Assembly (NCBI RefSeq): GCF_040938485.1
Contig: NW_027271210.1
Location: forward strand, 992,001-1,056,000
Length of the DNA: 64,000 bases
Direction: 5' to 3'
Source: Diadema antillarum
Taxonomy: Eukaryota
How positions within the stretch are numbered: the stretch's first letter is position 1; each line of letters starts with the position of its first letter. Made by a program: the position numbers and the translations under genes. Of the stretch, positions 713-54,604 are shown piece after piece. A model generated the notes under the pieces. That model had not been told where the DNA came from and searched no databases. It saw nothing but the letters and a program-made list of their open reading frames with translations.

Positions 713-1638
713 ATTTTTACGTTATACAATAGAACAAATGTTACATCATATAGTCTCGCTAAATTTATGTCTACAAAAGTAAATGGAATCCTCCTACACT
801 TAACGTTGGTGAGGTAAATTCGTATGCGTAATATGAAATAACAATGATTATAAAAGAAGACAAGGCGCTTCTATGGTAATAACAGAAATATAATAACTCC
901 AATAATAGCATACGAACGAGGTGTTCTAACAGTTAAGGTAAAAAAAAAATAGATTGGTTGTTTTACAGAGTCATGCTGACAAGCCCCTTCGAACGTCTAT
1001 GCATTTACGTAGAGATAGTTTGTGAAGGTGAGACATGAAAGAGGAATGTACATCTGGAGAAAAATTCTTGTGTCAAACTACAATGAAAGGGTTCACAAGT
1101 TTACAAGAGTGCAAACGGAACATTCTTGAGTGATTTATAACTGTGCACGGACACAGTCTTGACAAAAATAAAAAATTTTTATGTTATACAATAGAATAAA
1201 TTGTACATCATATAGTCTCGCTAAATTTATGTCTACAAAAGTAAATGGAATCCTCCTACACTTAACGTTGGTGAGGTAAATTCGTATGCGTAATATGAAA
1301 TAACAATGATTATAAAAGAAGACAAGGCGCTTATATGGTAATAACAGAAATATAATTACTCCAATAATACCATACGAACGAGGTGTTCTAACAGTTAAGG
1401 TAAAAAAATTGATTGGTTGTTTAACAGAGTCATGCTGACAAGCCCCTTCGAACGTCTATGCATTTACGTAGAGATAGTTTGTGAAGGTGAGACATGAAGG
1501 AGGAATGTACATCTGGAGGAAAATTCTTGTGTCAAACTACAATGAAAGGGTTCACAAGTTTACAAGAGTGCAAACGGGACATTCTTGAGTGATTTATAAC
1601 TGTGCACGGACACTGTCTTGACAAAAATAAAAAAAATT
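713..1638. repeat. Direct tandem duplication, two ~462-bp units (713-1174, 1175-1638)
   Basis: GTTATACAATAGAA...GTCTTGACAAAAATAAAAAA occurs twice with only scattered substitutions; no coding signal. Confidence 0.9.
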
Positions 1639-6139: not shown

Positions 6140-6142
<3 letters not shown>

Positions 6143-7241
6143 AGCGAAATCGATCAATTCCGCTGTATGGCCTGTATATAAGCTGTGTATTGATTTTTCA
6201 CTATCGATTATATGAAGGTGTAATCGATCATTGTTGGTAGTAACGTTGGTATAGGCAAGGTCCAAAAATCACGGTTTTGGCCACATTTATGATTATTACA
6301 TAAGATAAGGGCATTAGGGGGGTAAGATGATTGAAGATTCAGAGAGAGGTAATGGATACCAGTAATTTGAGACCAAATTTGTGGGGTTTTGGTTAGAATC
6401 ATTCGCCAAGATTGGTGTTCTAGTGGTGGAAATATTGATTAACTACGCTAACAATTATTTAGTAAAAATACAATTGGGTAATTCAGATTCTGTTTCGATG
6501 TCGAGTTGGGACGGATAAGGTAGGCACGTCTAGTACGTGTTGAGTTGGATCGAGCTGTCAAAGCTCGAGATAGCTGTGTACAAACAGTCTAGTGAAGGCG
6601 ATGATCAGGGTAGTCTACTCCTGATTGCTAGCCAAGTCTAGATATGTGAATGAAACGTACATAGCTAGCTGTCGAGTTGAGACGAGTAAGGCCGGGACGG
6701 GACTTGGAAATTGCGGGACCGGGTCTGCATTCTGAACTGTGTACAATTACTGCGGAAACGAGTTGGACTGTGTTTGTACAGAAGTATTCCCGAATTAAAG
6801 ACTACCTGTTGAACGTTATACCAAGAAGTGACTGGAAGAGTAATCTTTCCTACCAAAGATTCCTGAGCGAGTGCAGGTGAGTCGAGTGGACCTTGATGGT
6901 GACTGGTGGTAAAGAGATTGGTAGATGTAACATAATAGATAAAGTGCGAAGCTGGTATGTTGGACTGTTGATGAAGGACTGGTAGATAACTGGTAGAAAT
7001 AAATTGGTAGCAAGAATTAACTGGTATCTTGGGCCGTATATTGCGGCCAAACGAACTTACGCCTAGCTCGGCCATCCTGATCGAAGTTCGTCGTAGGGCC
7101 CCATTTTCGATACCAATCAATCTATCATCACACATCTATCACCAAACACAAGTTATTCGCTACACCAGAGGGATCTACCCCTTTCTACGATGCGGTGTCA
7201 GGACTGAGGGATATGCCCATATGCGACCGGATTTCGCCACA
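6140..7241 (+). repeat. 5' LTR (1102 bp)
   Basis: Begins TGTAGCGAAATC and ends GATTTCGCCACA (11/12 terminal inverted repeat). Manual alignment to 14881-15982 shows 3 transitions (6626, 6637, 6942). AATAAA at 6998-7003. Confidence 0.97.
6874..6882 (+). promoter_or_regulatory. Consensus 5' splice donor CAG|GTGAGT within the LTR
   Basis: Perfect match to the U1 consensus; intron would start at 6877 (copy at 15618 in the 3' LTR). Use is not demonstrated. Confidence 0.5.
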
Positions 7242-7243
7242 CG

Positions 7244-7261
7244 TGGTGTCAGGAGTGGGAT
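7244..7261 (+). promoter_or_regulatory. Primer binding site, tRNA-Leu (CAG-type)
   Basis: TGGTGTCAGGAGTGGGAT starts after a 2-nt spacer downstream of the LTR and is complementary to the eukaryotic tRNA-Leu 3' end ATCCCACTCCTGACACCA. Confidence 0.9.
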
Positions 7262-7302
7262 TTAAAAGAACCAGCGCTACCAGTGGGAGTTAGGAATCAG
7301 CC

Positions 7303-10300
7303 ATGGCAAAGCAGCTGTCACCGGCGCAGCTATGGAGGAAGCTGCAATCGGAGATGGTAGAAGTGGAGCGGATGATGGACGAACTTCGAGCTGAGATGGG
7401 GATGAGGCGGCCACCACCACCAGTATCAGGAAGTACTGGTAGAGTGAAGCCAGCAGACGGGACCAGCGGCAGGGGTGGTATTTTACAACCACAATATGAC
7501 GTTCCGGGTGCTAAAACCAGCACCAACAGCAGTGGGAGGACGACTGGTGCTACAGCAGGGAGCTGGGCCGACAGTAGCAGGGCAGATGTAACGTTGGAAG
7601 ACGATTACTACCCACCTCCAGCTGACAAAAGGGCGGAGATGAGGCAATGGCAGACTGCATCAAATTCAACCAGAGAGACAACGACAACCAACCCGGTACA
7701 AGAGAGAGAAGTCCCGATAAGAATCAGCACCCCATGGCGCCGCTCTGAATTGTGGGACGAAGGGCAATTCAAGCATCACGAGAGGGGACGTGATGTAATA
7801 ATAAAGATGACACCAGACCGGTACGACGGCAAGGGGCCTATTCTAGATTACCTAACCCACTTCGAGGCATGTGCTGGGGTAAACAGGTGGTCAGAAGAGG
7901 AGGCTCTGCAGTACCTGGCGGCCAGCATGAGAGGTCCTGCAGTTAAGGTACTGGTGCAGCAAACGGGGAGGAAATTAACCTACCAAGAGCTGGTGGGGCG
8001 ACTTAAACACCGATTTGGTCCGGCAGGGAAAGCAGAGATGTTTCTGGCGGAATTACGAACGAGGCGACGAAGACCCAAAGAGTCACTTCAAGAGCTGGGT
8101 CAGAGCATTCGGGAGCTGACGGCTCTAGCCTACCAAGAGTTTGATGAGGCGGGGCAGGACCGCTTAGCTAGGGGACACTTCATGGACGCTGTCGTGAGGC
8201 CGGAAATAAGAGAGGGGATGTTCCGTGCGCAGCCTCGCACGCTAGATGAGGCGATAGAGGCTGCACTAAGCACGGAGGCATTCTTAAAGATGGAGGCGGA
8301 AAGGTGTGACGGAAGGGGACCACGCTACAGCAGGGTGTTAACAAACACCGGTGGGAAACAGAAGGAGGGGACCACCAAGGAGGCTGAGGGTGTAGTCAGC
8401 AAAATGACAAAGGCCGTAGAAAGTCTAATTGCACGGTCTGAGTCTGCCAACCAGAAAGCAGCCAACACGGGAAAGATACCTGCTCTTCCAACAGGAATCT
8501 ACCAGAATGAGAGGTGCTTCAATTGTGGCCAAATGGGGCACTGGAGGAAGGATTGCCCCTTTCCACAAAGACGGCCAGTCTCCAATGCACCCGTCATGGA
8601 TGCAAGAAGATGCTACAACTGTAACCAGGTGGGCCATGGGTGGAGATATTGTCCGTATGGGCAAACGGAGAGACCACCACCAGTGAGCAGCAACCAAGGG
8701 GGAGAACCAGTATCTGCGCAGGGTAATACTGGTCCAGCTCTCCAACCACAACCTGCTGGAAGGGAGCAGGCACGACCATTGGGTACCGCAGATGGTAGAC
8801 GACTGGGCCTCTTCATCAATTCCAAAATCAACGGGCAGCCAATTACCTTCTTGATCGACACAGGCTCCTCCCAGTCAATCGTGTCTACCACCATTTATGA
8901 CACGATTGCAGAGGCACGGAAGCCGTCGCTGCAGAGTGTGGACAGCATAGTACATCAGGCGGACGGTACTCCACTGGGGACCAGGGGTAAAACCATGGCC
9001 GAGATCCAGCTTGGAGAGCTACTGTTCGTGCTGGAAGTAGTGGTAGCTAATGTCAACAGTGAAGGAATTTTGGGGTTGGACTTCCTGATGCAGACGAATT
9101 CAGTGTTGGACTGTCAGAAGATGGAGCTCCGGACGCCATGGGCCATCATTCCATGCCGAGACTACCAGGGCCAACCATTCTGTCATAGAATAGTTGCCAG
9201 TGAAACCACGGCTGTTCCAGCGGGTCATGAGGCCATAATAAAGGGAGAGGTAGCAGACAGACGGCGACAGGCGACTGGGGTTGGTCTGCTAGAAGCACCG
9301 ACAACTTCCACCGAGCTACTACATAAGGGACTACTGGTAGCACGAGCAGTAATCGAAGCAGACGCTGAGATACTACCAGTACGAGTCTTCAACCCAACGA
9401 AGGAAGAGAGAGTAGTAAAGAAAGGGACGACAGTTGCCTGCTTGACTGGAGTACGTGATACTGAAGATGTGGAGGCGATTCGAGACGGTGGGGTACAAGC
9501 TAGTGATGGGGTGCCATCACATTTGACGGAGCTGCTACATCGTAGTATCCAAGAGGTTCCGCAGCAATACCACTCATTGGTGGCCGAATTGCTGTGCGAA
9601 TTTACTGATGTCTTCTCCAAAGGACCAACGGATCTGGGCAGAACTGATTTGGTGCAACACACGATTTCTACCGGTGACGCTAGGCCAGTGAGACAAACAC
9701 AAAGGCGGCACCCAATGGAGCAACGACAGGAAATTGATAAGCAGATAAACGAGTTCCTCTCCCAGGGTTTGATCGAACGGGTCAGTAGCCCTTGGGCATC
9801 CAATGTGGTTCTCGTACGGAAGAAGGATGGTAGTAAGCGCTTTTGTGTGGACTACAGGCAGCTGAACGCTGTCACACTGAAGGACGCATACCCTCTACCA
9901 AGAATCGATGAAACATTAGATGCACTGAGTGGGGCTCAGTGGTTCTCTACACTCGACTTAGCAAGCGGGTATTGGCAGGTGGAGCTGGACGAACAAGCAA
10001 AGAAGAAGTCAGCATTCATTGCCAATGGTGGTCTGTATGCATGGCGGGTCATGCCCTTTGGCCTATGCAATGCACCGGCCACGTTCGAGAGGCTAATGGA
10101 TCGAGTGATGGCGGGCCTGACGTGGGAGACGCTACTGGTGTATTTGGACGTTGTCATCGTTTTTGGTAAGACGGTGGAGGAGGAGCTTGGTCGACTGAAA
10201 ACTGTGTTCCAGCGATTGCGTGGGGCTGGTCTGAAACTGAAACCTGCTAAGTGCCAACTGTTCCACACTACTGTGGAATACCTGGGGCACATCGTCTCAT

Positions 10301-12578
10301 CTACTGGGGTAACCACGGAGCCAGAGAAGGTCGCGGCCATCCAAAATTGGCCGAAACCAAACAGCGTCAAAGAGGTGCGGAGCTTCATAGGACTGGTCTC
10401 CTACTACCGGAAGTTTGTGGAAGGATTTGCTTCGATCGCTAAACCACTCCACCAACTCACCAGAAAGAACCAGAGGTTTCTCTGGACAGAGGAATGCCAG
10501 GAGGCTTTCGACAAATTGAAGCAACGACTGGTGTCACCTCCAATTCTGGCGTATCCCTGCCCAGAAGGGGACTACATTTTGGACACAGATGCCAGCCAGC
10601 ATGGAATCGGAGCCGTGCTGTCGCAAGTACAGGGAGGAACTGAGAGAGTTATTGCGTACGGAAGCCGCACGCTACGTAAGGAAGAAGTCAACTACTGTGT
10701 CACCAGGAAGGAATTACTGGCAGTGGTAGCCTTCCTCAACCAGTTCCGACAGTATCTCTATGGAAGGCATGTGATCATCCGCACTGACCATGGATCATTG
10801 CAGTGGTTGGTTTGATTCAAGGACCCCAGAGGGCAGCTGGCACGATGGTTGGAGCTGGTATCGGAGTACGATTTCGAGATACAGCACCGGCAGGGGAGGA
10901 GCCATGGAAATGCTGATGGTCTATCTCGGAGACCATGTAGGCAGTGTGGCCGGGACCAAGAAACCCCACCCGGGCAAGTCAGAGCACTGACAGAGGAGGC
11001 GTTGGGAGCCCCGAGTATTCGGAGTCTTCAGGAGAAGGATGAGGACATACAAGTGGTGAGAGCTGCGAAGATTCGAGGGGTGAAGCCAGCCAATGAAGTG
11101 GTGTCATCTTGGCCGGAAAAAGCAACTCGATTGTTGGAGCACTGGGACGCATTGGAGGTGGTAGATGGCGTGCTGGTCCGCAGATGGGAGTCAGCGGATG
11201 GTACCAACACCCGGAGACAGACCATCCTACCAAGGGAGCTCATAAAGAATGCGATACATGAGGTCCATTCTGCTCTTACTGGGGGACATTTGGTATCCAG
11301 AAGACACTGGGACGATTGAAGTTGCGGTACTACTGGGTCGGCATGGCAGCTGATGTTCGTTCGACCCTCAGACAGTGTGACGTGTGTGCCAGAAGGAAGT
11401 GTCCTGGTAAAGCTGCTCGAGCACCACTACAACAAAGGATTAGTGGGTTCCCGTTGGAGAGAGTGGCATTGGACATCATGGGCCCTTTCCCCCGGACCAA
11501 GCATGGGAACAAGTACATCCTGGTGATTGGCGACCACTTCACAAAATGGATGGAGGCCTACCCAATACCAGATGAAAGGGCGGAGACCGTGGCAGAGAGA
11601 CTGGTGGTGGAGTACATCTGTCGATTTGGGGTACCAAGATTCGTACATTCGGATCAAGGCCGAAATTTCATCTCTGAAGTCTTCAGTGAAGTCTGCAAGC
11701 TGATGGGGGTGAAAAAGACCAGGACCACAGCCTACAACCCAAAGTCAGACGGGTTCGTAGAAAGGTACAACCGCACCCTAATAGACACAGTTGCTGCACT
11801 ACTGGACGTGGAGAGGCAGGAAAAGGATTGGGATCAACTTCTCCCTTTCGCCACCTGTGCCTACCGCAGCTGTGCTCAGGACTCGACTGGGGAAACTCCC
11901 AACATGCTAATGTTGGGGCGAGAGGTGGTATTGCCCGGTGACATCGTCACACCAGATGATGTTGACAGCCAGCAGGACCTCCAGACCGATTATGCGGAGG
12001 AGCTACGGGCTCGAATGCAGAGGGCCCACAACCGAGCCAGGGTGAAACAGATGTCGGCCTGTAGAAAGCAGAAACGATTCTACGACCAGAAGGCCCATGG
12101 ATCTGCCTTCAACCAGGGCCAGTATGCGTGGCTACGGCGGAAGATGAGGGTGAAAGGACAGAGTCCAAAACTTCAGACCAAATGGCTGGGACCGTACCTG
12201 ATAGTCACCAAAATATCGGATGTGACTGTTCGACTCCAGTTGACACCTCGCTCCAAGCCATTGGTTGTCCACGTAGATCGGTTGAAGCTGTACACAGGGG
12301 TACCGAGACCAGTTTGGGAGTTCGAACCAAACACGGCGGTGGTACAAGCTAGAGACCAGCAGCAAGCCACTGCTGCCGACGTGGAGCTGGACGAGTCAGG
12401 GCTGGAAGAAGCTGGTGCTACTCACCCCTCTAGCTATGAAGAGAGAGAAGTGGATTCTCAACCGCCAGTTAGGAACCGGAAGTCTCCGACTGTGCCAACG
12501 GCATGCGACGATGATGACTGGAATGGAGGAAGGCGTTATCCGAAGAGGGATAGGCGTCGGCCGCAGTATTATAATTAG
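7303..12578 (+). pseudogene. gag-pol: Gypsy gag-pol polyprotein, disrupted (segments 7303-10815, 10816-11292 in the same frame, then frame of 11316-12578)
   Basis: Gag CA (PDRYDG...HFEACA), two CCHC knuckles (8515-8556, 8611-8652), protease LIDTGS (D at 8857), RT (LPRID, PFGLCNAPATF, YLDV at 10141-10152), RNase H (ILDTDAS), integrase HHCC + D11472/D11652/E11760 + GPY. In-frame TGA at 10813-10815. A 1-nt deletion at ~11292; restoring it gives GGHLGIQKTLGRLKLRYYW. Confidence 0.95.
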
Positions 12579-12693
12579 GCACTAAGTAACGAATCTAAAT
12601 AATCGAGTGATACTCGAATGTATTCGATGAGCTAAATAATAAGGATTAAAGACTGTGGTATTATTAATGTGCAGGTGCAGTGCAGGCAACGAC

Positions 12694-14097
12694 ATGGCAT
12701 CTTCCAAAAAGGGGGATTTGTACAGTCCCTTCAACGATTATTTCGGGCTGAGTAAGCTGGTATCAACGGGGAGGAAGAAGAGGGAGACCGTGGACCAAGA
12801 GACGGGCAACCAGTTCTTTGATTTTGAACAGGTGCGAGGCTCGTTCAATAGCTACCTGGGGTTAGACGAAGGGGAAGCGACAGTGACGAAGAAGAGTGGA
12901 TCCCAGGACCTAGGGACGAGATACCAGTATCCGGCCTTACGGAGGGACGGCGATGCAGCTGCGTGTCTGTCAACTGGTAGCCGTTGGCTGAGCAACGAGG
13001 GGATTCTACCAGACATCACCACTCTAAGAGGACGAGATGGAAGTGATGGACCACTCAGCAGATCAGTGTCTTGGTGCGTTTTCTGCAAAAACAATGGTGA
13101 AAGTTTGCAGGTCTACGGAAGCCACGCGCTGAAGTCCATAGACGGGAAAACTACCTGTCCTGTACTTCGGGCATACAGGTGCCCGATTTGTCGCGCCACC
13201 GGGGACGAGGCTCACACCATTAAGTACTGTCCATTATCAAGAAAGAAAAAGCTGCCTGGGTCAGCAGAGCCAGGATCTACCAGTAACATCAGCACAGCGG
13301 CGCTGTATTTTAAAACCCCACGGAATGCTGCCGGACGGCTGAGGAGCTGTAATACCAGAACGATGTCCACCCCCGGAAAACCCAAGTCCTGTTCAGACAG
13401 GGGAGAAGTCTACCGTTGTAAGGTGTGCCGGCGGTCCTTTTCCAGTAAAAGCTCGATGCAACGACACGAATTCGACGTGCACACCCCCAAATTTAGGTGT
13501 GATCGCTGTGCTTTCCAGACGCTGCACAAGCGAGAATTAGAACGCCACTACGGGACTCACGCCACCGATGTAGCTCCAGGGCGGGTACATTTGAAAACCC
13601 CAGTTTATGCGCCAATTAGGAGTAAGAAGCCGCCGTCAACGGAAACCAGACCCAGGAGTAGATCCCCCCTGTGCCCCTCTACTCCAACCCCTTCCCGGTG
13701 CACGCCTGAGAGGTGCACCCCAGAGAGGAGTGTCAGCCCAGTGAGGAGCGTCACATCTGAAAGAAGCAGTACCCCGGTGCTGGATGAGGACAGCTGTGGT
13801 AGCGGGCTCCTCGACCTGACTGGCGGAAGGCGGCGATTAGTAATCGAGGACGTGGTACCTGAAGTCAAATCCCCGGTAACATGTGGAATCGGGGTCCAGG
13901 TGTCACCATCCGACATTGACGGGGGGATTATCCGAGGGAGGCTAGGAGAATTACGACGCAGAGGGAAGACCAGTTTCAGCGCTACCGAGACGCTGGTGTT
14001 GCGGCCTGGCCGAACGTGGACCAGGAAGACGGAGCGGTTCCTGACGACTGGTGGCGAGTTTTTGGAGGTAGTGACCGAAACCGTGGAGGAAAAGTAG
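12694..14097 (+). CDS. nanos: Retrotransposon-borne Nanos-like protein fused to 2 C2H2 zinc fingers and an S/T-P-rich tail (467 aa from ATG 12694; alternative ATG 12667)
   Basis: NIM-like YSPFNDYFGLSKLV (12721-12762); Nanos finger C-X2-C-X12-H-X10-C-X7-C-X2-C-X7-H-X4-C (13075-13230); C-terminal LYFKTPRNAAGR; C2H2 pair 13411-13560; no introns or stops. Confidence 0.92.
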   Translation: MASSKKGDLYSPFNDYFGLSKLVSTGRKKRETVDQETGNQFFDFEQVRGSFNSYLGLDEGEATVTKKSGSQDLGTRYQYPALRRDGDAAACLSTGSRWLSNEGILPDITTLRGRDGSDGPLSRSVSWCVFCKNNGESLQVYGSHALKSIDGKTTCPVLRAYRCPICRATGDEAHTIKYCPLSRKKKLPGSAEPGSTSNISTAALYFKTPRNAAGRLRSCNTRTMSTPGKPKSCSDRGEVYRCKVCRRSFSSKSSMQRHEFDVHTPKFRCDRCAFQTLHKRELERHYGTHATDVAPGRVHLKTPVYAPIRSKKPPSTETRPRSRSPLCPSTPTPSRCTPERCTPERSVSPVRSVTSERSSTPVLDEDSCGSGLLDLTGGRRRLVIEDVVPEVKSPVTCGIGVQVSPSDIDGGIIRGRLGELRRRGKTSFSATETLVLRPGRTWTRKTERFLTTGGEFLEVVTETVEEK

Positions 14098-14845
14098 TGG
14101 AAGCGAAATTTTGGTAGAAGTGCGTGGGCAGATATGGACGTTAAACATAATTTGCCCAAATTGAGTTTGGACAATAAGTTATAATTGGACGTTTCTGAGG
14201 ACTGTTCGCGAAGATAGTGAAAGTGGTAGCGGATACCGGAAGGAAGATGTGGAAGCGATTATTGGTAGAGAAGGGCAGATACGGACGCTAAATTTAATCT
14301 GTCTAATTTTAAATTGGACATTAAGTTGTTAAAAGTGAACATTCCCAAGGACTGATGGACATTACTAATGTAATTGTTCTGGAAGAACGATGGTATTAAG
14401 TTGGATTCAATGAAGCTTATGTACGGAGATGTAGTGATTCCACGGAGTAGTGGAGGGACGTCATTGAAGCGATACCAGGTGTTGGTAGAATTGGTTTGAA
14501 GAGTTGGTAGAACCATATTGGTATCCACATTACAATTGGTAGATATGGTAATGACTGGTCTTGGAGTCTTAGCTTTCTTCTTCTCAAATTTTGAGTTGGT
14601 TGTGTCCATGTTGGAAGAAAGGGGGTATTAGACAAGGTTGGAGAGGTGGCGTTAAAAATGTACATAATGTTAATGGTTTTAAAGGAATGATGAGTGTTAT
14701 TAGAAATCATAAGGTGATGTTTTAAAAGGATTTGGTGGTGGACACCAGTATAAGTATTTTGGTAGTTGATACCAGTCGGAATGTGATGGAGGTCGGTTTG
14801 TGTTTAAAGTGTTGACGTTTAAAGTGTTTAAGATTGAAGTGGTAT

Positions 14846-14880
14846 AAGCTCGGGGACCGAGCTTGGTGGGTCGGGGGTCG
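14846..14880 (+). promoter_or_regulatory. Hairpin (AAGCTCGG-GGA-CCGAGCTT) plus G-rich polypurine-tract equivalent abutting the 3' LTR
   Basis: Position immediately 5' of TG at 14881. GGTGGGTCGGGGGTCG is G-rich but not pure purine. Confidence 0.65.
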
Positions 14881-15979
14881 TGTAGCGAAATCGATCAATT
14901 CCGCTGTATGGCCTGTATATAAGCTGTGTATTGATTTTTCACTATCGATTATATGAAGGTGTAATCGATCATTGTTGGTAGTAACGTTGGTATAGGCAAG
15001 GTCCAAAAATCACGGTTTTGGCCACATTTATGATTATTACATAAGATAAGGGCATTAGGGGGGTAAGATGATTGAAGATTCAGAGAGAGGTAATGGATAC
15101 CAGTAATTTGAGACCAAATTTGTGGGGTTTTGGTTAGAATCATTCGCCAAGATTGGTGTTCTAGTGGTGGAAATATTGATTAACTACGCTAACAATTATT
15201 TAGTAAAAATACAATTGGGTAATTCAGATTCTGTTTCGATGTCGAGTTGGGACGGATAAGGTAGGCACGTCTAGTACGTGTTGAGTTGGATCGAGCTGTC
15301 AAAGCTCGAGATAGCTGTGTACAAACAGTCTAGTGAAGGCGATGATCAGGGTAGTCTACTCCTGATCGCTAGCCAAGCCTAGATATGTGAATGAAACGTA
15401 CATAGCTAGCTGTCGAGTTGAGACGAGTAAGGCCGGGACGGGACTTGGAAATTGCGGGACCGGGTCTGCATTCTGAACTGTGTACAATTACTGCGGAAAC
15501 GAGTTGGACTGTGTTTGTACAGAAGTATTCCCGAATTAAAGACTACCTGTTGAACGTTATACCAAGAAGTGACTGGAAGAGTAATCTTTCCTACCAAAGA
15601 TTCCTGAGCGAGTGCAGGTGAGTCGAGTGGACCTTGATGGTGACTGGTGGTAAAGAGATTGGTAGATGTAACATAATAGATAGAGTGCGAAGCTGGTATG
15701 TTGGACTGTTGATGAAGGACTGGTAGATAACTGGTAGAAATAAATTGGTAGCAAGAATTAACTGGTATCTTGGGCCGTATATTGCGGCCAAACGAACTTA
15801 CGCCTAGCTCGGCCATCCTGATCGAAGTTCGTCGTAGGGCCCCATTTTCGATACCAATCAATCTATCATCACACATCTATCACCAAACACAAGTTATTCG
15901 CTACACCAGAGGGATCTACCCCTTTCTACGATGCGGTGTCAGGACTGAGGGATATGCCCATATGCGACCGGATTTCGCC

Positions 15980-15982
<3 letters not shown>
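14881..15982 (+). repeat. 3' LTR (1102 bp)
   Basis: 1099/1102 identical to the 5' LTR by manual comparison; AATAAA at 15739-15744. Confidence 0.97.
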
Positions 15983-26808: not shown

Positions 26809-27251
26809 ACACGTTCACTGCACCTATATACGTAACTAGTACACAAAGACACCTACACACAGCAGAGAGGAATGAAAGAGAGAGGGGGAGTGTCCACCGA
26901 CAGTCGAAAAACACATTAAACATGTTGACTAGAAATACTTTGCGACACCAGCTGCTGAAAAAGTAAGGAAAAGAAAAACCAACGACAGTGAATTTGAAAA
27001 GAGACCACAATTGAACAGTTCGATAACCACGGCAAGCATAAAATATGAAGAAATATTTACATATATTCAGATTATGACATGTCAACCATAGTAAGATATG
27101 TATGTTCAACTGCTATTTTTTGAGCAGGATCAGCTTTCAGAATTGACAACTCTTGTTTGACACACAACATCATTAGTCGTGTTCGTATAATGTTTAATTA
27201 TCATTGTTGCTGCTATGTTTTTTTTTCTTCTATGTTCTAGGATTAATCACC

Positions 27252-29102
27252 ATGGCAACGAGTCATCAGATCAGCAGCCAGAATCTGGAGTGTCCTGTCT
27301 GTCTGACACTCTTCAACCAACCCAAATCATTGACGTGTTCTCATACCTTCTGCAAAGACTGCCTAGAACGCATCTTTCTCACTCAGACAAACCAACATAC
27401 TATATCATGCCCTGTATGCAGGACAGAGACTTCTGTACCGAATGGAGAGGTGGCTAAGTTACAAACAATTGTGGCGCTGGGTTCTCTTGTGGACGAAGTG
27501 AAGACCAACAATCCCACATGCACAGTTTGTGAGCTGGACGCAAAGCCCCCAGCTGTGTCCTACTGTCAGACATGCATGGAAAACATGTGTTTATCCTGTG
27601 AGAAAGACCATTCTGTCTGGAAAAGGTTCTCCAACCACGCAGTGGTGGCCGTGAGCGAAGTGGTCTCTGGGAAAGTTCCACTTAAGAGGCGACGAAAGTG
27701 TAAGGAACACCCTAACGAGGATAAAGACTGTTTCTGCACCGGATGTCGGGAGTACGTCTGCTTCAAATGCGGGATGTTGGAGCACACGCAGGAGGGACAT
27801 GGGATGGTAAAGGCACAAAAACATGAGAAAATGACACTGGAAAATATCAAGGAACTACAGAGAAGAACAAACTCAAAGAAAACAATCGTTGAAGAACACA
27901 TCGACTTCATAGAGAAACAACGCAAGGAGATATCAAACATGATGACAAAGCTCAACGATGACATAGACAAGACGTACGAGGAATGCATGCAACGTTTGTC
28001 AGAGAGAAAAGAGACACTTAAATGTGAAGTGAGGCAATTGTCTGAAATGTTTGAGAAGGAATTGCACGTCATGGCGGAAAGGAGTCATCGAACTCTCAAT
28101 CGAATGAACGCTGCGGAGGAGCTGGTAGCTAACGGTATAAAGGTACCGTTAGAGAAAGACGCCTTGATTACACACGAAACAGTTTGCGAGAACTTCAAGA
28201 ACATTTTGGAACGAAATTATCTTAACGACCAATTACCAATATATGTGAAAGAACGAGCTCAGAAGATTTCATTCCATAAACAGGAGATGGTCAATGATCC
28301 TTGTCTTGGAGAGCTTAAAGGTTATAAGTGGGATGTCAAAACATGCGTAGAGTTACCTAAGTGCTGCTATGGTGTGCACTGTATCAGCCGTGCACCAGAC
28401 AATAAGATGGCAGTGGCACGTCATGATGGAATCCTTCTCTACTCCCATGATGGTGAGTTACAAGACTGGGTACTACAGAATCATTGTATTTATGCAATTG
28501 CATTCCTGTCTGACGGTCGAAGTGTCGTACAAGATCTTAACGAGATTTCACTGTACACTCGACAGTGGGAGAAACTCGATATTGGATTTAAGTCAAGTCA
28601 CGACCTACATAAATATCACTGTCGTCTTTTCACTGATCTAAATGATGATATCTACGTGAACATTCGGAATTCGAAAATCATCGAGGTATTTACCCCACAG
28701 GGTGGTAAGGTAGTCAGAGAAATCATGTCTGATGGATATTCATTTCCGCGATTATTCTCCTTTCAATCCGCTGAAAACATGATACTGACAGATAGAGATA
28801 CCGTCGTGTGCATTGATAGTAAAGGGACAAAGGAAATTATCTTGCAGAAAAAGGACATGTTTGCATCCCAAGCTGTTTGTCGAGATGACTCAGTCATTGT
28901 AGTCTGGGTGAATAAAGATGAGAGTCTTATTAGTATCGATCGATACACGAGTGACCTCCAGCACCTTCAGAATCTCGTCAGTGATTTCAAAATGCGTGAA
29001 TTATGGTACTGGGCCTACTACTACTACGGCCTACAAGAGTTTGAGAGTGGCGAGATAGCATTCTGTACGAATAATGAACTCTGCATATTTCATACAACAT
29101 AA
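27252..29102 (+). CDS. TRIM E3 ligase (RING-Bbox1-Bbox2-coiled coil-NHL-like propeller), paralog 1, 616 aa, single coding exon
   Basis: C3HC4 RING CPVC...CSHTFCKDC...CPVC; B-box1 CTVC...CQTC...CLSC...H; B-box2 CKEH...CTGC...CFKC...H; helical region; beta-rich C-terminus. Pyrimidine tract + AG acceptor at 27240, 11 nt before the ATG. Confidence 0.92.
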   Translation: MATSHQISSQNLECPVCLTLFNQPKSLTCSHTFCKDCLERIFLTQTNQHTISCPVCRTETSVPNGEVAKLQTIVALGSLVDEVKTNNPTCTVCELDAKPPAVSYCQTCMENMCLSCEKDHSVWKRFSNHAVVAVSEVVSGKVPLKRRRKCKEHPNEDKDCFCTGCREYVCFKCGMLEHTQEGHGMVKAQKHEKMTLENIKELQRRTNSKKTIVEEHIDFIEKQRKEISNMMTKLNDDIDKTYEECMQRLSERKETLKCEVRQLSEMFEKELHVMAERSHRTLNRMNAAEELVANGIKVPLEKDALITHETVCENFKNILERNYLNDQLPIYVKERAQKISFHKQEMVNDPCLGELKGYKWDVKTCVELPKCCYGVHCISRAPDNKMAVARHDGILLYSHDGELQDWVLQNHCIYAIAFLSDGRSVVQDLNEISLYTRQWEKLDIGFKSSHDLHKYHCRLFTDLNDDIYVNIRNSKIIEVFTPQGGKVVREIMSDGYSFPRLFSFQSAENMILTDRDTVVCIDSKGTKEIILQKKDMFASQAVCRDDSVIVVWVNKDESLISIDRYTSDLQHLQNLVSDFKMRELWYWAYYYYGLQEFESGEIAFCTNNELCIFHTT

Positions 29103-37272: not shown

Positions 37273-37530
37273 AGGGATCGTATAGTTTTGGTTGAGACCT
37301 AATTTAAGGTTTCAAACATTTTTTGGTGAGATAATGAGAAACCTCTTATGAAATATGAAAGAGCATGTCATTCCATAAGAAATTCAACGTCTATTTGATG
37401 AATATTGGTTTTGAAATGGCTGAGATATCCAGAAGAGAGCAATTCTAACAAATTGTGGGACCCACACTTTATTAGGATCGTTTTGTTTTACTTTGTTTTT
37501 GGATGTTTCAGTCATTCCAAACCCGATTTT
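37273..37530 (+). mobile_element. Left part of a TTAA-flanked non-autonomous DNA transposon (Kolobok-like)
   Basis: TTAA|AGGGATCGTATAG start; interrupted by a LINE tail at ~37530; right end not confidently located. Confidence 0.4.
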
Positions 37531-37740
37531 CAAGTTTCAAGTTTCTTTATTTCACCAAAGAAAGGAACATATTAAAAAAAACAATACATACATCAATATT
37601 CGAATACGATTACAAACATATCAATAATACAGTGAAAAGGAAAATATACGACAAAAATAGATTGACAATTACACATACATAGGTTTAACAGATATGGAAG
37701 GTAGCAGCCAGAAAGGAAATATCCCTTATTTGTAGCTTTT
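37530..37740 (-). mobile_element. 3' UTR fragment of the same LINE family as 39151-43740
   Basis: Shares CAAGTTTCTTTATTTCACCAA and GCAGCCAGAAAGGAAAT.TCCCTTATTT with 39158-39305. Confidence 0.7.
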
Positions 37741-38019
37741 TAAACTTTGAATTCCTCTTAAAATGGTACGCTCTGTACTATATCACGAGTGTTTTCTTGG
37801 TATCTCATCTCCACCAATACTGTACCATCCCTTTAATGTGCCCACTGTGACTTACGTTGTGTCATTGATATCCGATGGAAGATGTTCTAGTGTCAAAGGG
37901 AATACTGTCAAAATATCAATTTCCTACTTTGAGCAAGTTTCAGTGAACCTCGCTTGTTTAAAATTTCGCGCGAGAGAGTGTCCTCGTACATTAGTTTGAT
38001 AGATATGGCGTGCCTACGT

Positions 38020-49416: not shown

Positions 49417-51264
49417 ATGGCAACAATTCATCAAATCAGCATGCAGAATCTGGGGTGTCCTGTCTGTCTGACACTTTTCAACCAACCGAAAACGCTATTT
49501 TGCAGTCACACATTCTGCAAAGACTGCTTGGAACGTATCTTTCAAACTCAAACCAACAAACATGCTATAACATGTCCTGTGTGCAGGCAAGGAACTTCAG
49601 TTTATAACGGAGATGTGGGTCACTTACTTCCAAGCGTAGTCCTAAATTCTCTCGTGGACGAAGTGGAAACCATCAGGAATTCAACACCAACATGCACACT
49701 TTGTACAGGCACAGACAAAAAAATGCCAGCTGTGTCCTATTGTCAGGACTGTGGGGATAGTATGTGTACATCCTGTGAAAAAACACATCTAATCTGGACA
49801 CCGTTCTCCAACCATGCAGTTGTGGATATGAAGGAGGTTGTCTCTGGGAAGGTTCCGCTTAAAAGACGACGGAAGTGTAACGAGCACCCTAACAGCGATG
49901 AACAATGTTTCTGTACCGGATGTCGAGAGTACGTGTGTTGCATATGTGGAATGTTGAAGCACTCACAGAAGGGACATGGAATGGTTAAGGCATCAAAACA
50001 CGAGAAAAAATTATTGGAAAATGTTAAAGAATTACAGAAAAGAGCAAGCTCAAAGAAAATAATCCTTGAAGAACACATTGAGTTCATAGAAACACAACAC
50101 AAGGAAATATCAGATATGATGAGAAAGCTCAATGATGACATAGACAAGGCGTACGAGGAAAACATACAACTATTGTCAGCCAGAAGAGAGGCGCTCAAAT
50201 GGGAAGTGCGGCAACTTTCTGAAGAATTCAAGAAAGAATTGAATATCATGAAGGAAAGGAGTCGTCTAAGAATCACTCAAATTAACGCTGCGGAAGAGCT
50301 GGTAGCTGACGGTGTGAAGTTGCCGTTGGAGAAAGATGCATTGATTACACACCACACACTGTGCGAGAACCTGGAGACCCTTCTTGGACAAAATTATCCT
50401 AACGACCAATTACCGAGATATGTGAAAGAACGAGCTCAGAAGATTTCATTCCATAGACAGGTGACGGTCAATGATCCTTGTCTTGGAGAGCTTAAAGGTC
50501 ATACTTGGGATGTCAAGACGCGCGTAGAGCTACCTGTCGACGAGGATGCAATGACTTGTATCACTCGTGCACCAGACAATAAGATTGCTGTGTCCTGGAA
50601 TCGTGGAATCCTTCTCTACTCCCATGATGGCGAGTTACAGGACAGGCTTCTGCAAGATCACTATATTACTGCGATTGCTTTCCTGTCTGATGGTCGAAGT
50701 GTCATAAATGATGACGATAACATTTTTCTCTACACTCGACAGTGGGAGAAACTCGATATCGAATTTGAATCAGGTAACTTTCTAGGTGTACATTTTGGTA
50801 ATCTCTCTACTGATGCAAGCGATAACATCTACGTGGGTTTTGAGTGGTCGAAAGTCATAGAGGTATTTACCCCACATGGTGGTAAATCAGTCAGGAAAAT
50901 AATGTGTCATGGATATTCACCGTGGCAATTATTCTCCTTTAAATCCACGGAAAACATGATACTGACGGACAGAGAAACCGTCGTGTGCATTGATAGTGAA
51001 GGGAGAAAGGTCCATACCATGCAAAAAGAGAACAAATTGGCATTCCCAGCTGTTTGTCGAGATGATTCGGTCATTGTAGCCTGGGTAGATGAAGAGGAGA
51101 GTCTTATCAGTATCGATCGATACACGAGTGATCTCGAGCACCTTCATAATCTCATCAGTGATTTCAGAACAAGTGAGTCAGACTACTACGGTCTGCAAGA
51201 GTTTGAGAGTGGCGAGATAGCATTCTGTCTGGATGATGAACTCTTCATATTCCATACAACCTAA
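49417..51264 (+). CDS. TRIM E3 ligase (RING-Bbox1-Bbox2-coiled coil-NHL-like propeller), paralog 2, 615 aa, single coding exon
   Basis: Same architecture and colinear with paralog 1; acceptor TACAG| at 49405, 11 nt before the ATG. Confidence 0.92.
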   Translation: MATIHQISMQNLGCPVCLTLFNQPKTLFCSHTFCKDCLERIFQTQTNKHAITCPVCRQGTSVYNGDVGHLLPSVVLNSLVDEVETIRNSTPTCTLCTGTDKKMPAVSYCQDCGDSMCTSCEKTHLIWTPFSNHAVVDMKEVVSGKVPLKRRRKCNEHPNSDEQCFCTGCREYVCCICGMLKHSQKGHGMVKASKHEKKLLENVKELQKRASSKKIILEEHIEFIETQHKEISDMMRKLNDDIDKAYEENIQLLSARREALKWEVRQLSEEFKKELNIMKERSRLRITQINAAEELVADGVKLPLEKDALITHHTLCENLETLLGQNYPNDQLPRYVKERAQKISFHRQVTVNDPCLGELKGHTWDVKTRVELPVDEDAMTCITRAPDNKIAVSWNRGILLYSHDGELQDRLLQDHYITAIAFLSDGRSVINDDDNIFLYTRQWEKLDIEFESGNFLGVHFGNLSTDASDNIYVGFEWSKVIEVFTPHGGKSVRKIMCHGYSPWQLFSFKSTENMILTDRETVVCIDSEGRKVHTMQKENKLAFPAVCRDDSVIVAWVDEEESLISIDRYTSDLEHLHNLISDFRTSESDYYGLQEFESGEIAFCLDDELFIFHTT

Positions 51265-52245: not shown

Positions 52246-54604
52246 CACTGGCGTAGCCAGGGGGGGGGGGGGGGGGGGGGGGGGGCGATGGGGGCGGTCG
52301 CCCCCCCCCCCCCCCCCCTGAGATTTGGACCGGGGATTTGGGAGGCGGAAAAAAAATGCGTGTATACTATATGCATGCACATGAAGCGGGTCTCCTTTGC
52401 AACCTTTCATCAAATAAAATATTTTTTTGAATATGTCACTCAAAGTGTGCACCAGATCGTTGAATTTCAATTCAAAATATGCAAAATCTCTCATGCTTGG
52501 GAGGGGGTATCCCCCTCCCAAACCCTCCCCCTCTGTGCCTCTTTCCCTAGCTAAGTACACTTTTTAGATTTACAAAAAATTATGAATAATTCTGAGCGCA
52601 CAAGACTTATCACTTATATTCCGAAAAACTCAAGGTTCCTTCATATATAAGGGGAATTTCCCCTTCTAATCGACCCTTTCCTCCCTCAGCCCCCCCCCCC
52701 TATCAGTTTTTTTTTTTTTTTTTTGGTGATTTCCCAAATGTTGATTCCATCAAATATGCGTATACGAGATATCTCAATTTCAACCTTAAAAAGGCAAAAG
52801 CTCCATCGGAAGGGAAGGGTGGAGATAACACTCGTCCACGCCTTCTCCCTGTTCGCCCCCCCCCCCCCCGCCATGCATAAAAGTAGACTGTGGCTATACC
52901 CAGATCGCTTTATTTCAATTCTAAAAACGCAAAAGCTCCACGAGCGGGAGGGGGAATCCCCCTTCCCCTAAGCTCTATATACCTCACTAGACTTTATACA
53001 TACACACAGATGGTGCACATTCGGAATAAGAGCTAAATTCCGTGATTTTAACACTTCGATGAAAAAGTATTGCACCAAAAATTTGCACCAGGTCGCTGAA
53101 TTTCAGGTCTGAAAACGCAAAATCACCTTCGTGTGGCAGGGGATATGCCCTATCTACACCCTCGTGTGCATGCTTTTTCTGTTTGATTGCTGAACAGACA
53201 GCGTTCATGATATTCAGCGTAAGAATTAATACAAGAAGACCAGTGTATTTGAATTATACCATTTTATAGGCAAATTGTTCAATAATAATCTACACTAAAA
53301 TATACTGCAACCTTTCAACTCGTTAAAACACGCAAAAACATGCATCAAATTGCACCATTTGCAACATCAAAATGCAAAAAGTTCTCACCGTGGGAGGGGG
53401 GACACACCCTCCCCTCCCACCTCGCTCGCTCCACTCGCTCGGGTTCAGTCGCGTTCATGATATTCAGTGAAAAGAATTAATACAAGAAGTGTATTTAAAT
53501 TATATCATTTTATAGGCAAATTGTTCAATAATAATCTACACTAAAATATACTGCAACCTTAAACAAGTGGCACTGTTTCAACTCGTTAAAATACGCAAAA
53601 ACATGCATCAAATTGCACCATTTGCAACATCAAAATGCAAAAAGTTCTCACCGTGGGAGGGGGGACACCCCCCTCCCTTCCCCCCTCGCTCGCTCCACTC
53701 GCTCGGGTTCAGTTGCGTTCATGATATTCAGTGAAAAGAATTGATACAAGAAATGTGTTCAAATTATACCATTTAATAGGCAAATTGTTCAATTATAATC
53801 TACACTAAAATATACTGCTACCTTAAACAAGTGGGACTGTTTCACGTCAACAAAACGCGCAAAAACATGCATCAAATTGCACCATTGCAAAATCAAAATG
53901 CAAAAAGTTCTTACCGTGGGAGGGGGGAAACCCCCCTCCCACACCCTCCCCTCCCCCCTCGCTCGTTCCACTCGCTAGGGTTCAGTCGCGTTCATGATAT
54001 TCAATGAAAAGAATTAATACAATAAGTGTATTTAAATTATACCATTTTATAGGCAAATTGTTCAATAATAATCTACACTAAAATATACTGCTATATACCT
54101 TAAACAAGTGGGACTGTTTCACGTCGATAAAACGCGCAAAAACATGCATCAAATTGCACCATTTGCAACATCAAAATGCAAAAAGTTCTTACCGTGGGAG
54201 GGGGGACACCCCCTCCCACACCCTCCCCTACCCCCTCGCTCGCTCCGCTCGCTCGGGTTCAGTCGCGTTCATGATATTCAGTGAAAAGAATTAATACAAA
54301 AGTGTATCTAAATTATACCCTTTTATAGGCAAATTGTTCAATAATAATCTACATCAAAATAAACTGCTACCATAAACAAGTGGGACTGTTTCACGTCGAT
54401 AAAACGCGCCAAAACATGCATCAAATTGCACCATTTACAACATTAAAATGCAAAAAAGGTCTTACCGTGGGAGGGGGGACACCCCCCTCCCACACCCTCC
54501 CCCCCCCCCCCCCCCCTCGCTCGCTCCGCTCGCTCGGGCTCGGTCGCTTCGCTCCCTCGCAGACTAACCGCCCCCCCTAAGATGAAATCCTGGCTACGCC
54601 GTTG
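52246..54604. mobile_element. Non-autonomous hAT-type element (2359 bp) with 8-bp TSD GTTCCGGC
   Basis: TIR CA(CT/AC)GGCGTAGCCAGG; TSD at 52238-52245 and 54605-54612; empty paralogous site at ~31195-31230. Confidence 0.88.
53202..54540. repeat. Five ~250-277-bp tandem units inside the hAT element
   Basis: Units start GCGTTCATGATATTCA at ~53202, 53451, 53715, 53988 and 54265. Confidence 0.9.

What the first reader, a model, noticed from the sequence alone, without database searches (positions are those of the whole stretch)
12721..13341. The captured Nanos keeps its effector motifs: N-terminal NIM (apparently duplicated) and the C-terminal RNxAGR motif
Seen: YSPFNDYFGLSKLV (12721-12762), a second partial copy SFNSYLGL (12841-12864), and LYFKTPRNAAGR just after the finger. 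Established: vertebrate Nanos proteins bind CNOT1 via an F..W.DY.GL..L.-type NIM, and NANOS2 ends in a LY...RNSAGR-like motif. Inference: the whole Nanos protein was captured, not just the RNA-binding finger, and short linear motifs persist while the linkers diverge. That points to selection for active CCR4-NOT-mediated deadenylation rather than a passive passenger or a finger-only decoy.
Basis: partly seen in the sequence, partly recalled or inferred. Interest (0 to 1): 0.8.

Follow-up and report, generated by a model that had tools for sequence, protein, structure and literature searches.

The report
Sea-urchin retrotransposon carrying whole Nanos gene
A young LTR retrotransposon in a Diadema sea-urchin genome carries a complete copy of the germ-cell regulator Nanos, with its deadenylase-recruiting motif, RNA-binding finger and sea-urchin-type tail motif intact; this copy also appears to record a splicing event that fuses Nanos to a second zinc-finger protein.

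Summary
They sit in a 467-codon ORF (12694-14097) between pol and the 3' LTR of a 9.8-kb env-less Ty3/gypsy-type LTR retrotransposon (6140-15982; LTRs 1102 nt, 3 mismatches). The host is Diadema.

- **Whole gene captured.** The first 222 codons align end to end with sea-urchin Nanos2-type proteins.
- **First motif.** Residues 10-19 carry all five positions that define the CNOT1-interacting motif (NIM) and match a NIM profile at 26 bits.
- **Second motif.** It resembles the first far above chance, but lacks the first aromatic and the Asp. Half the family also lacks the Leu. Host Nanos has no equivalent and the profile misses it, so it is not a second NIM.
- **Tail motif.** It is an echinoid Nanos signature and nearly invariant in the family. 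Its function is unknown, and the NANOS2 comparison could not be tested.
- **Selection.** Fourteen family proteins (12 full-length, 222 aa) occur in two Diadema species. dN/dS is 0.085 in the finger, 0.16 in the tail motif and 0.65 in linkers.
- **New: spliced copy.** Eight sister copies have a 156-178-nt GT...AG spacer that supplies the Nanos stop. The window copy lacks exactly that spacer, so it was probably copied from a spliced RNA, fusing Nanos in frame to a conserved C2H2 gene.

CNOT1 binding remains inferred.

The parts
6140..7241 (+). 5' LTR (1102 nt, TG...CA ends); holds a perfect donor-like site CAG|GTGAGT at 6874-6882
   Evidence: matches 14881-15982 with 3 mismatches; for the donor-like site (its use is inference only)
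7244..7262 (+). primer-binding-site-like stretch starting TGG two bases after the LTR; primer tRNA not identified
   Evidence: sequence; one search found no tRNA gene in the window
7303..12578 (+). gag-pol: CCHC knuckle, aspartyl protease, reverse transcriptase, RNase H, integrase. Broken in this copy: 1 in-frame stop and 1 frameshift
   Evidence: Pfam; counts against the uninterrupted 791-codon sister ORF
12656..12685 (+). acceptor-like motif (TGGTATTATT then three tandem ...CAG) ending 8 nt before the Nanos ATG; resembles the acceptor before ORF4 in sister copies
   Evidence: identical in 7 of 8 sister copies (one substitution in L009); its use as an acceptor is inferred
12694..13359 (+). 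captured Nanos coding region, 222 codons, echinoid Nanos2 type
12718..12762 (+). NIM (residues 9-23): Y10, F13, D15, Y16, L19 at the five defining positions
12841..12864 (+). NIM-like second stretch (residues 50-57) inside an insertion absent from host Nanos; fails the NIM definition
13075..13236 (+). Nanos CCHC-CCHC zinc finger (residues 128-181), all eight ligands present
   Evidence: dN/dS 0.085
13303..13341 (+). post-finger basic motif (residues 204-216), an echinoid Nanos signature
13363..14097 (+). ORF4, 244 codons plus stop, with two C2H2 fingers at 13411-13563. A separate gene in sister copies; here joined in frame to Nanos because the GT...AG spacer is absent
14851..14880 (+). G-rich polypurine-tract-like stretch abutting the 3' LTR
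   Evidence: conserved with the distant relative L010
14881..15982 (+). 3' LTR; the element sits in an (AT)n microsatellite, so the target-site duplication cannot be read

Best explanation
Window 6140-15982 is a recently inserted, env-less Ty3/gypsy-type LTR retrotransposon of a Diadema sea urchin. Between pol and the 3' LTR it carries two accessory genes. The first is a complete echinoid Nanos2-type gene that keeps three working parts. The N-terminal NIM would dock its aromatic residues into the hydrophobic pocket of the CNOT1 SHD and so recruit the CCR4-NOT deadenylase. The CCHC-CCHC finger binds RNA alongside a partner such as Pumilio. The basic post-finger motif more likely helps RNA or partner binding than acts as an effector. 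The second gene, ORF4, encodes a two-finger C2H2 protein. It is the older cargo of this element lineage, because a distant relative has ORF4 but no Nanos. In eight sister copies the two genes are separated by a 156-178-nt GT...AG spacer whose first bases complete the Nanos stop codon. Unspliced RNA therefore gives a 222-residue Nanos, and spliced RNA would give a Nanos-ORF4 fusion. The window copy lacks exactly that spacer. It was therefore most likely reverse-transcribed from a spliced RNA and now encodes the fusion constitutively. Shown: the anatomy, the homology, the motif match, purifying selection on the finger, tail motif and ORF4, and the precise absence of the spacer. Inferred: CNOT1 binding and deadenylation, splicing in living cells, expression of the accessory genes from spliced subgenomic RNAs, and any benefit to the element.
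For: Element: LTR pair with 3 mismatches in 1102 nt and TG...CA ends; the order gag knuckle, protease, RT, RNase H, integrase. Nanos: Pfam E 4.6e-24; solved Nanos fingers; end-to-end alignment with Diadema Nanos. NIM: Bhandari et al. 2014 (PMC4003280) define F40, W43, D45, Y46 and L49 of human NANOS1 as the contact or invariant residues and report the NIM in echinoderms. Here Y10, F13, D15, Y16 and L19 have the same spacing. A profile of 27 cellular NIMs scores 26.1 bits. Family: 14 proteins (12 full-length) at 89-97% identity on many scaffolds and chromosomes of D. antillarum and D. setosum. Loci L002 and L003 are collinear with window 10195-15446, which covers pol, Nanos, ORF4 and the 3' LTR. 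Selection (Nei-Gojobori): Nanos 0.46 overall, finger 0.085, tail motif 0.16, linkers 0.65, ORF4 0.22, pol 0.16-0.19. Spacer: GT and AG are kept in 8 of 8 sisters although its interior varies; the window lacks exactly this stretch and the join is in frame. ORF4 lineage: the relative P0149 (51% identity) lies in locus L010, which has an integrase end, an ORF4 homologue and the start of an LTR but no Nanos.
Against: No binding, expression or RNA data exist here. The NIM evidence within the family rests on very few changes, and family divergence is low, so 15 unchanged residues are not by themselves significant. The sister copies were found through annotated intact proteins, which biases dN/dS downward. 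The spacer junction also has a 3-nt repeat (CAG) on both sides, so a plain genomic deletion is not excluded. No fused Nanos-ORF4 protein is on record. This copy's own pol is broken (1 stop, 1 frameshift), so the copy itself is probably not autonomous. The AlphaFold2 model was too poor to say anything (mean pLDDT 41).
Confidence: 0.65

Rival explanations
1. Passenger: Nanos was picked up by accident and is carried without function; the intact motifs reflect only the youth of the copies.
For: Copies are young (LTR identity 99.7%; family identity 89-98%). Linkers evolve nearly neutrally (0.65). Single copies do lose NIM residues (3 singleton changes).
Against: Finger dN/dS is 0.085 and tail motif 0.16 across subfamilies shared by two species. 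Shared changes in the finger are 5 synonymous to 1 non-synonymous. No nucleotide likeness to the host nanos locus remains and protein identity is only 41%, so the gene has been carried for a long time without decaying.
Confidence: 0.12
2. Antagonist: the element's Nanos competes with host Nanos for Pumilio, target RNAs or CNOT1, rather than acting as a repressor in its own right.
For: It diverges strongly from host Nanos in the linkers. It lacks most of a conserved host segment (the ITELSKVMRG-type piece of the Nanos protein degradation element, quoted in preprint 10.1101/2022.08.12.503758). It is fused to another protein in the spliced form.
Against: A finger-only decoy would not need the NIM, yet the NIM is kept at all five positions. 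Nothing distinguishes a sponge from a repressor at sequence level.
Confidence: 0.12
3. Host gene family: the many nanos-like genes are a host expansion maintained by selection on the animal and only flanked by element debris.
For: NCBI annotates them as ordinary genes (nanos homolog 1-like, 3-like).
Against: In the window and in both sister loci fetched with 2.5-kb flanks, the gene lies between integrase and the 3' LTR of the same element. Six further loci share the same upstream and downstream element sequence. The true host gene is single, alone in its locus and only 41% identical.
Confidence: 0.04
4. For the sub-claim about splicing: the missing spacer is an ordinary genomic deletion between two CAG repeats, not a record of splicing.
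For: A 3-nt repeat flanks the junction. Only one such copy was seen, and no fused protein is on record.
Against: The missing stretch is exactly GT...AG with an A/T- and pyrimidine-rich run before the AG. Both dinucleotides are kept in 8 of 8 sisters while the interior varies in length and sequence. The join is in frame and removes the stop. The distant relative L010 also has a strong acceptor-like site 3 nt before its ORF4 ATG.
Confidence: 0.12

Closest known systems
Sea-urchin Nanos2 (S. purpuratus NP_001073023.1 cluster, Lytechinus and Diadema Nanos; P0006/P0299, P0012, P0014, P0005)
   Same: Single-exon gene of about 210-230 codons. It has an NIM at the N-terminus, a CCHC-CCHC finger, and the post-finger [FY][KR]TPRxxxGR motif, found only in these echinoid proteins among 135 cellular Nanos sampled.
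   Different: Only 41% identical, with 8 extra N-terminal residues and an insertion holding the NIM-like stretch. Most of the conserved host segment before the finger is missing, and there is no host UTR. It lies inside a mobile element and can be joined to ORF4.
Vertebrate NANOS1-3 NIM bound to the CNOT1 SHD (Bhandari et al. 2014, PMC4003280; Raisch et al. 2016, PMC5207322)
   Same: Aromatic, aromatic, Asp, Tyr and Leu at the same spacing, close to the N-terminus.
   Different: Tyr and Phe stand where NANOS1 has Phe and Trp, as in other echinoderm and cnidarian Nanos. Binding was not tested here. The solved peptide chain did not come back from the structure search.
Retroelements that carry captured cellular sequence: acute transforming retroviruses (own knowledge) and Drosophila TART-A with part of nxf2 (PMC7785250, listed)
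   Same: A cellular coding sequence sits inside a retroelement and is copied with it.
   Different: Here the cargo is a complete germline translational repressor. It is kept in many copies in two species under purifying selection, in an element that also keeps gag-pol. I found no report of a Nanos-bearing retroelement in the held library.
LTR retroelements with a third ORF expressed from spliced RNA (errantiviruses) and plant Ogre elements with an intron (own knowledge, not tested here)
   Same: Accessory ORFs lie downstream of pol and are preceded by acceptor-like sites, and the element has an intron.
   Different: No env gene. The intron lies between two accessory genes and its removal fuses them. 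One genomic copy has lost it.

Membership tests
Nanos protein family | Two consecutive CCHC zinc knuckles (Pfam zf-nanos) | tested here: met
   Pfam E 4.6e-24 over profile positions 1-53 of 54. Solved zebrafish and fly Nanos match at E 1.6e-17 and 8.8e-16. C128, C131, H144, C155, C163, C166 and C179 are invariant and H174 nearly so.
NIM-bearing Nanos (first motif, residues 9-23) | [quoted passage not shown] | tested here: met
   Y10, F13, D15, Y16, L19. Profile of 27 cellular NIMs: 26.1 bits at residues 10-24. Kept in 11-12 of 12 family proteins.
NIM-bearing Nanos (first motif) | Direct binding to the hydrophobic pocket of the CNOT1 SHD | not testable with these tools
   No complex prediction is available. 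The single-chain model had mean pLDDT 41.
NIM (second stretch, residues 50-57) | The same five positions | tested here: not met
   Arg at the first aromatic position and Ser at the Asp position; the Leu is Ser in 6 of 12 proteins. The profile does not report it at E 1000, and no cellular Nanos of 35 has two NIMs.
Echinoid Nanos2 type | Post-finger motif [FY][KR]TPRxxxGR 20-30 residues after the finger | tested here: met
   Present in the element family (12 of 13 columns invariant) and otherwise only in Diadema, Lytechinus and the S. purpuratus Nanos2 cluster.
A looser [KR]xxRxxxGR occurs in 16 of 124 Nanos tails (echinoid and lepidopteran) against 0.38 expected by chance.
Ty3/gypsy-type LTR retrotransposon | Paired LTRs with TG...CA ends; the order gag knuckle, protease, RT, RNase H, integrase | tested here: met
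Ty3/gypsy-type LTR retrotransposon | Target-site duplication | tested here: inconclusive
   Both flanks are (AT)n.
Endogenous retrovirus or errantivirus | An envelope gene after pol | tested here: not met
   The ORFs after pol are Nanos and a C2H2 protein. ORF4's only relatives are one orphan homologue, three fragments of it and generic C2H2 proteins.
Spliceosomal intron between Nanos and ORF4 | GT...AG stretch shared by relatives and precisely absent from a copy | tested here: met
   GT and AG in 8 of 8 sisters; exact absence and an in-frame join in the window. RNA evidence cannot be obtained with these tools.

The most novel reading that the evidence does not exclude
The element uses its own Nanos, freed from the host's 3' UTR and from most of the host protein segment that restricts Nanos to germ cells. 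With it, the element would impose Nanos-type repression of Pumilio-target mRNAs in the cells where it is expressed, favouring its passage through the germ line. Alternative splicing would add a second form in which the CCR4-NOT-recruiting Nanos is fused to the lineage's older C2H2 protein and so aimed at other nucleic acids.
Probability: 0.25. Interest if true: 0.9.

Novelty: new variant of a known kind. Interest (0 to 1): 0.72.

Why it matters
Nanos is a conserved germ-line determinant whose misexpression is harmful and which hosts restrict tightly (preprint 10.1101/2022.08.12.503758). A mobile element that carries a complete, selectively maintained Nanos with its deadenylase-recruiting motif would be a clear case of a retrotransposon taking over a host germ-line regulator, not merely evading host defence. 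The spacer-less copy is also a genomic record that the element's RNA is spliced. The family gives a natural series for asking which short motifs of Nanos are indispensable. Here the NIM, finger and tail motif are kept, while the linkers and a regulatory segment are not.

Tried and rejected
- **Structure search with the N-terminus.** Residues 1-63 against solved-structure sequences gave no match even at E 10. The NIM peptide chain is probably under the 20-residue limit.
- **AlphaFold2.** The Nanos part with a 15-row alignment gave mean pLDDT 41, which is unusable, so I made no fold search.
- **Fused protein.** A word search with the whole 467-residue ORF found no fused Nanos-C2H2 protein and did not find the window's own protein.
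- **ORF4.** A word search found nothing (one search was a frame slip, which I corrected). The exhaustive search found one full-length relative and three fragments. All other hits were generic C2H2 matches to query residues 1-151, mostly about 10-70.
- **Host locus.** The host nanos locus has no nucleotide likeness to the element; the only hit is an unrelated repeat.
- **Recent duplication of the NIM.** Rejected: 12 of 21 bases in the core and 38 of 81 with flanks.
- **Literature.** No paper in the held library reports a Nanos-bearing retroelement. The Troyka paper (PMC12440569) concerns a different lineage.
- **Primer tRNA.** Not identified; there is no tRNA gene in the window.
- **Splice donor for the accessory genes.** Only a donor-like site in the LTR was found; I did not pursue it.

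Full report
**Observation.** The three peptides are present in one reading frame:
- YSPFNDYFGLSKLV at 12721-12762
- SFNSYLGL at 12841-12864
- LYFKTPRNAAGR at 13303-13338

The ORF most likely starts at the ATG at 12694 and runs to 14097 (467 codons). Pfam zf-nanos matches residues 128-180 at E 4.6e-24. Two C2H2 fingers follow at residues 240-290. Solved zebrafish and fly Nanos fingers match at E 1.6e-17 and 8.8e-16.

**Setting.** The ORF lies inside an LTR retrotransposon spanning 6140-15982.
- The LTRs are 1102 nt each, differ at 3 positions and have TG...CA ends. The element sits in an (AT)n microsatellite, so the target duplication cannot be read.
- gag-pol (7303-12578) has a CCHC knuckle, aspartyl protease, RT, RNase H and integrase in Ty3/gypsy order.
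- In this copy pol carries one in-frame stop and one frameshift relative to a sister copy.
- There is no envelope gene. After pol come only the Nanos ORF and the C2H2 part.

**Host and family.**
- The closest proteins are 14 annotated Diadema proteins at 89-97% identity. Twelve of them are 222 residues long. They lie on many scaffolds of D. antillarum and on at least eight chromosomes of D. setosum.
- Two of the 14 are partial: one lacks the N-terminus and one ends inside the finger.
- The ordinary host gene (P0005, D. setosum) is a single exon, alone in its locus, and 41% identical.
- I fetched sister loci only as partial stretches: two with 2.5-kb flanks and six with 0.4-kb flanks, never a whole element.
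- L002 (D. setosum) and L003 (D. antillarum) are collinear with window 10195-15446, which covers pol, Nanos, ORF4 and the 3' LTR, at 92-98% identity (80% in L002's 3' LTR). These proteins therefore come from sister elements, not from host paralogues.

**Whole-gene capture.**
- Host residue 1 aligns to element residue 9. Host residue 192 of 210 aligns to element residue 217.
- The element adds 8 N-terminal residues.
- It has an insertion (about residues 46-80) that holds the second NIM-like stretch.
- It lacks about nine residues of a conserved host segment before the finger. That segment is the ITELSKVMRG-type part of the Nanos protein degradation element, quoted in preprint 10.1101/2022.08.12.503758.
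- No nucleotide likeness to the host locus remains.

**The NIM.** Bhandari et al. 2014 (PMC4003280) show that F40, W43 and Y46 of human NANOS1 insert into the CNOT1 pocket. D45 and L49 are invariant, and single substitutions of the aromatics abolish binding. They also report the NIM in echinoderms, cnidarians, sponges and molluscs, but not in insects.
- Here Y10, F13, D15, Y16 and L19 have that spacing.
- In an alignment with echinoderm and cnidarian Nanos, Y16, G18, L19 and L22 are invariant, and F13 and D15 nearly so.
- A profile of 27 distinct cellular NIM blocks hits the element protein once, at residues 10-24, with 26.1 bits.
- Among 12 full-length family proteins, Y16, G18, L19 and L22 are kept in 12, and Y10, F13 and D15 in 11 each.
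- Shared changes in the NIM are 1 synonymous and 0 non-synonymous. The three non-synonymous changes are singletons.

**The second stretch.**
- Its likeness to the first motif is far above chance (1 of 200,000 shuffles). At the DNA level it is only 12 of 21 bases.
- It has Arg at the first aromatic position and Ser at the Asp position. In 6 of 12 family proteins the Leu is Ser.
- The profile does not report it, and none of 35 NIM-bearing cellular Nanos has two NIMs.
- I do not count it as a NIM.

**The tail motif.**
- The motif [FY][KR]TPRxxxGR occurs in only 5 of 135 cellular Nanos proteins held, all echinoid: Diadema, Lytechinus and the cluster holding S. purpuratus Nanos2.
- Twelve of its 13 columns are invariant in the family, and its dN/dS is 0.16.
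- A looser [KR]xxRxxxGR is also found in lepidopteran Nanos tails: 16 of 124 against 0.38 expected.
- Its function is unknown.
- The disordered region after the finger of NANOS3 raises RNA affinity in the DND1-NANOS3 complex (PMC12485838). By that analogy I think RNA or partner binding is more likely than an effector role.

**Selection.** dN/dS values are Nei-Gojobori estimates: the Nanos values are summed over pairs of nine coding sequences; ORF4 and pol are single-pair comparisons between copies.

| Region | dN/dS |
|---|---|
| Nanos overall | 0.46 |
| Nanos finger | 0.085 |
| Nanos tail motif | 0.16 |
| Nanos linkers | 0.65 |
| ORF4 | 0.22 |
| pol | 0.16-0.19 |

The copies were found through intact annotated proteins, which biases these values downward.

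**New result: the spacer.**
- In all eight sisters Nanos ends after 222 codons, at a stop formed by the first bases of a 156-178-nt stretch. That stretch begins GT and ends AG, with an A/T- and pyrimidine-rich run before the AG.
- ORF4 starts 4 nt after it.
- The window copy lacks exactly that stretch, and the join is in frame.
- The simplest reading is that this copy was reverse-transcribed from a spliced RNA.
- A plain deletion between the flanking CAG repeats is the rival; I give it about 0.12.
- A similar acceptor-like motif lies 8 nt before the Nanos ATG in all copies.
- A perfect donor-like site lies in the LTR.
- Together these suggest spliced subgenomic RNAs for the accessory genes, but that is inference only.

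**ORF4.**
- The word search found nothing.
- The exhaustive search found one full-length relative, P0149 (51% identity), plus three fragments. Otherwise it found only generic C2H2 hits.
- P0149's locus, L010, comes from ENA assembly ERZ26222911, organism not given. It has an integrase end (75% identity), a stretch of about 700 nt with a protease-like piece, the ORF4 homologue preceded by a strong acceptor-like site, and the start of an LTR. It has no Nanos.
- ORF4 is therefore the older cargo. Nanos is a later gain, or it was lost in that line.

**Known or new.** I found no report of a Nanos-bearing retroelement in the held library. That is absence in that library only.

**Slips and limits to declare.**
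- In my private working I reasoned about where the two pol breaks lie, from ORF bounds that a tool printed. This report and my notes give counts only.
- In my private working I also recalled a tRNA end from memory while guessing the primer.
- In one search each rarer codon was compared with the commonest codon of its column in order to count changes.

Noticed in passing
window 13359-13363, and L002-L009 after the Nanos stop: Sister copies have a 156-178-nt GT...AG spacer between Nanos and ORF4. The window copy lacks exactly that stretch, giving an in-frame Nanos-C2H2 fusion. It looks like a copy made from a spliced RNA.
   Followed up: yes
L010 1-3295 (ENA ERZ26222911): A distant relative of the element has an integrase end, an ORF4 homologue (51% identity) and the start of an LTR, but no Nanos. 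The gap holds a protease-like fragment.
   Followed up: partly
window about 12994-13030 (element residues about 101-112) against host P0005: The element's Nanos lacks most of a conserved host segment before the finger. That segment has been described as part of a Nanos protein degradation element in S. purpuratus.
   Followed up: partly
window 6874-6882 (and the same site in the 3' LTR): A perfect match to the splice-donor consensus lies inside the LTR. It is a candidate donor for subgenomic RNAs, but its use is unknown.
   Followed up: no
P0132-P0147 (lepidopteran Nanos tails): A basic [KR]xxRxxxGR motif about 15 residues after the finger resembles the echinoid tail motif. It may be an old, patchily kept Nanos motif.
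   Followed up: partly
window 27204-29102 (+) and 49417-51264 (+): Two single-ORF RING plus B-box (TRIM-like) genes.
   Followed up: no
window about 39462-43462 (-): Remnant of a non-LTR retrotransposon with endonuclease and reverse-transcriptase ORFs.
   Followed up: no
window 713-1634, 53313-54509 and 37326-37807: A 459-nt tandem duplication; a 264-nt satellite-like array; and a repeat shared at 87-90% with the D. setosum host nanos locus L001.
   Followed up: no
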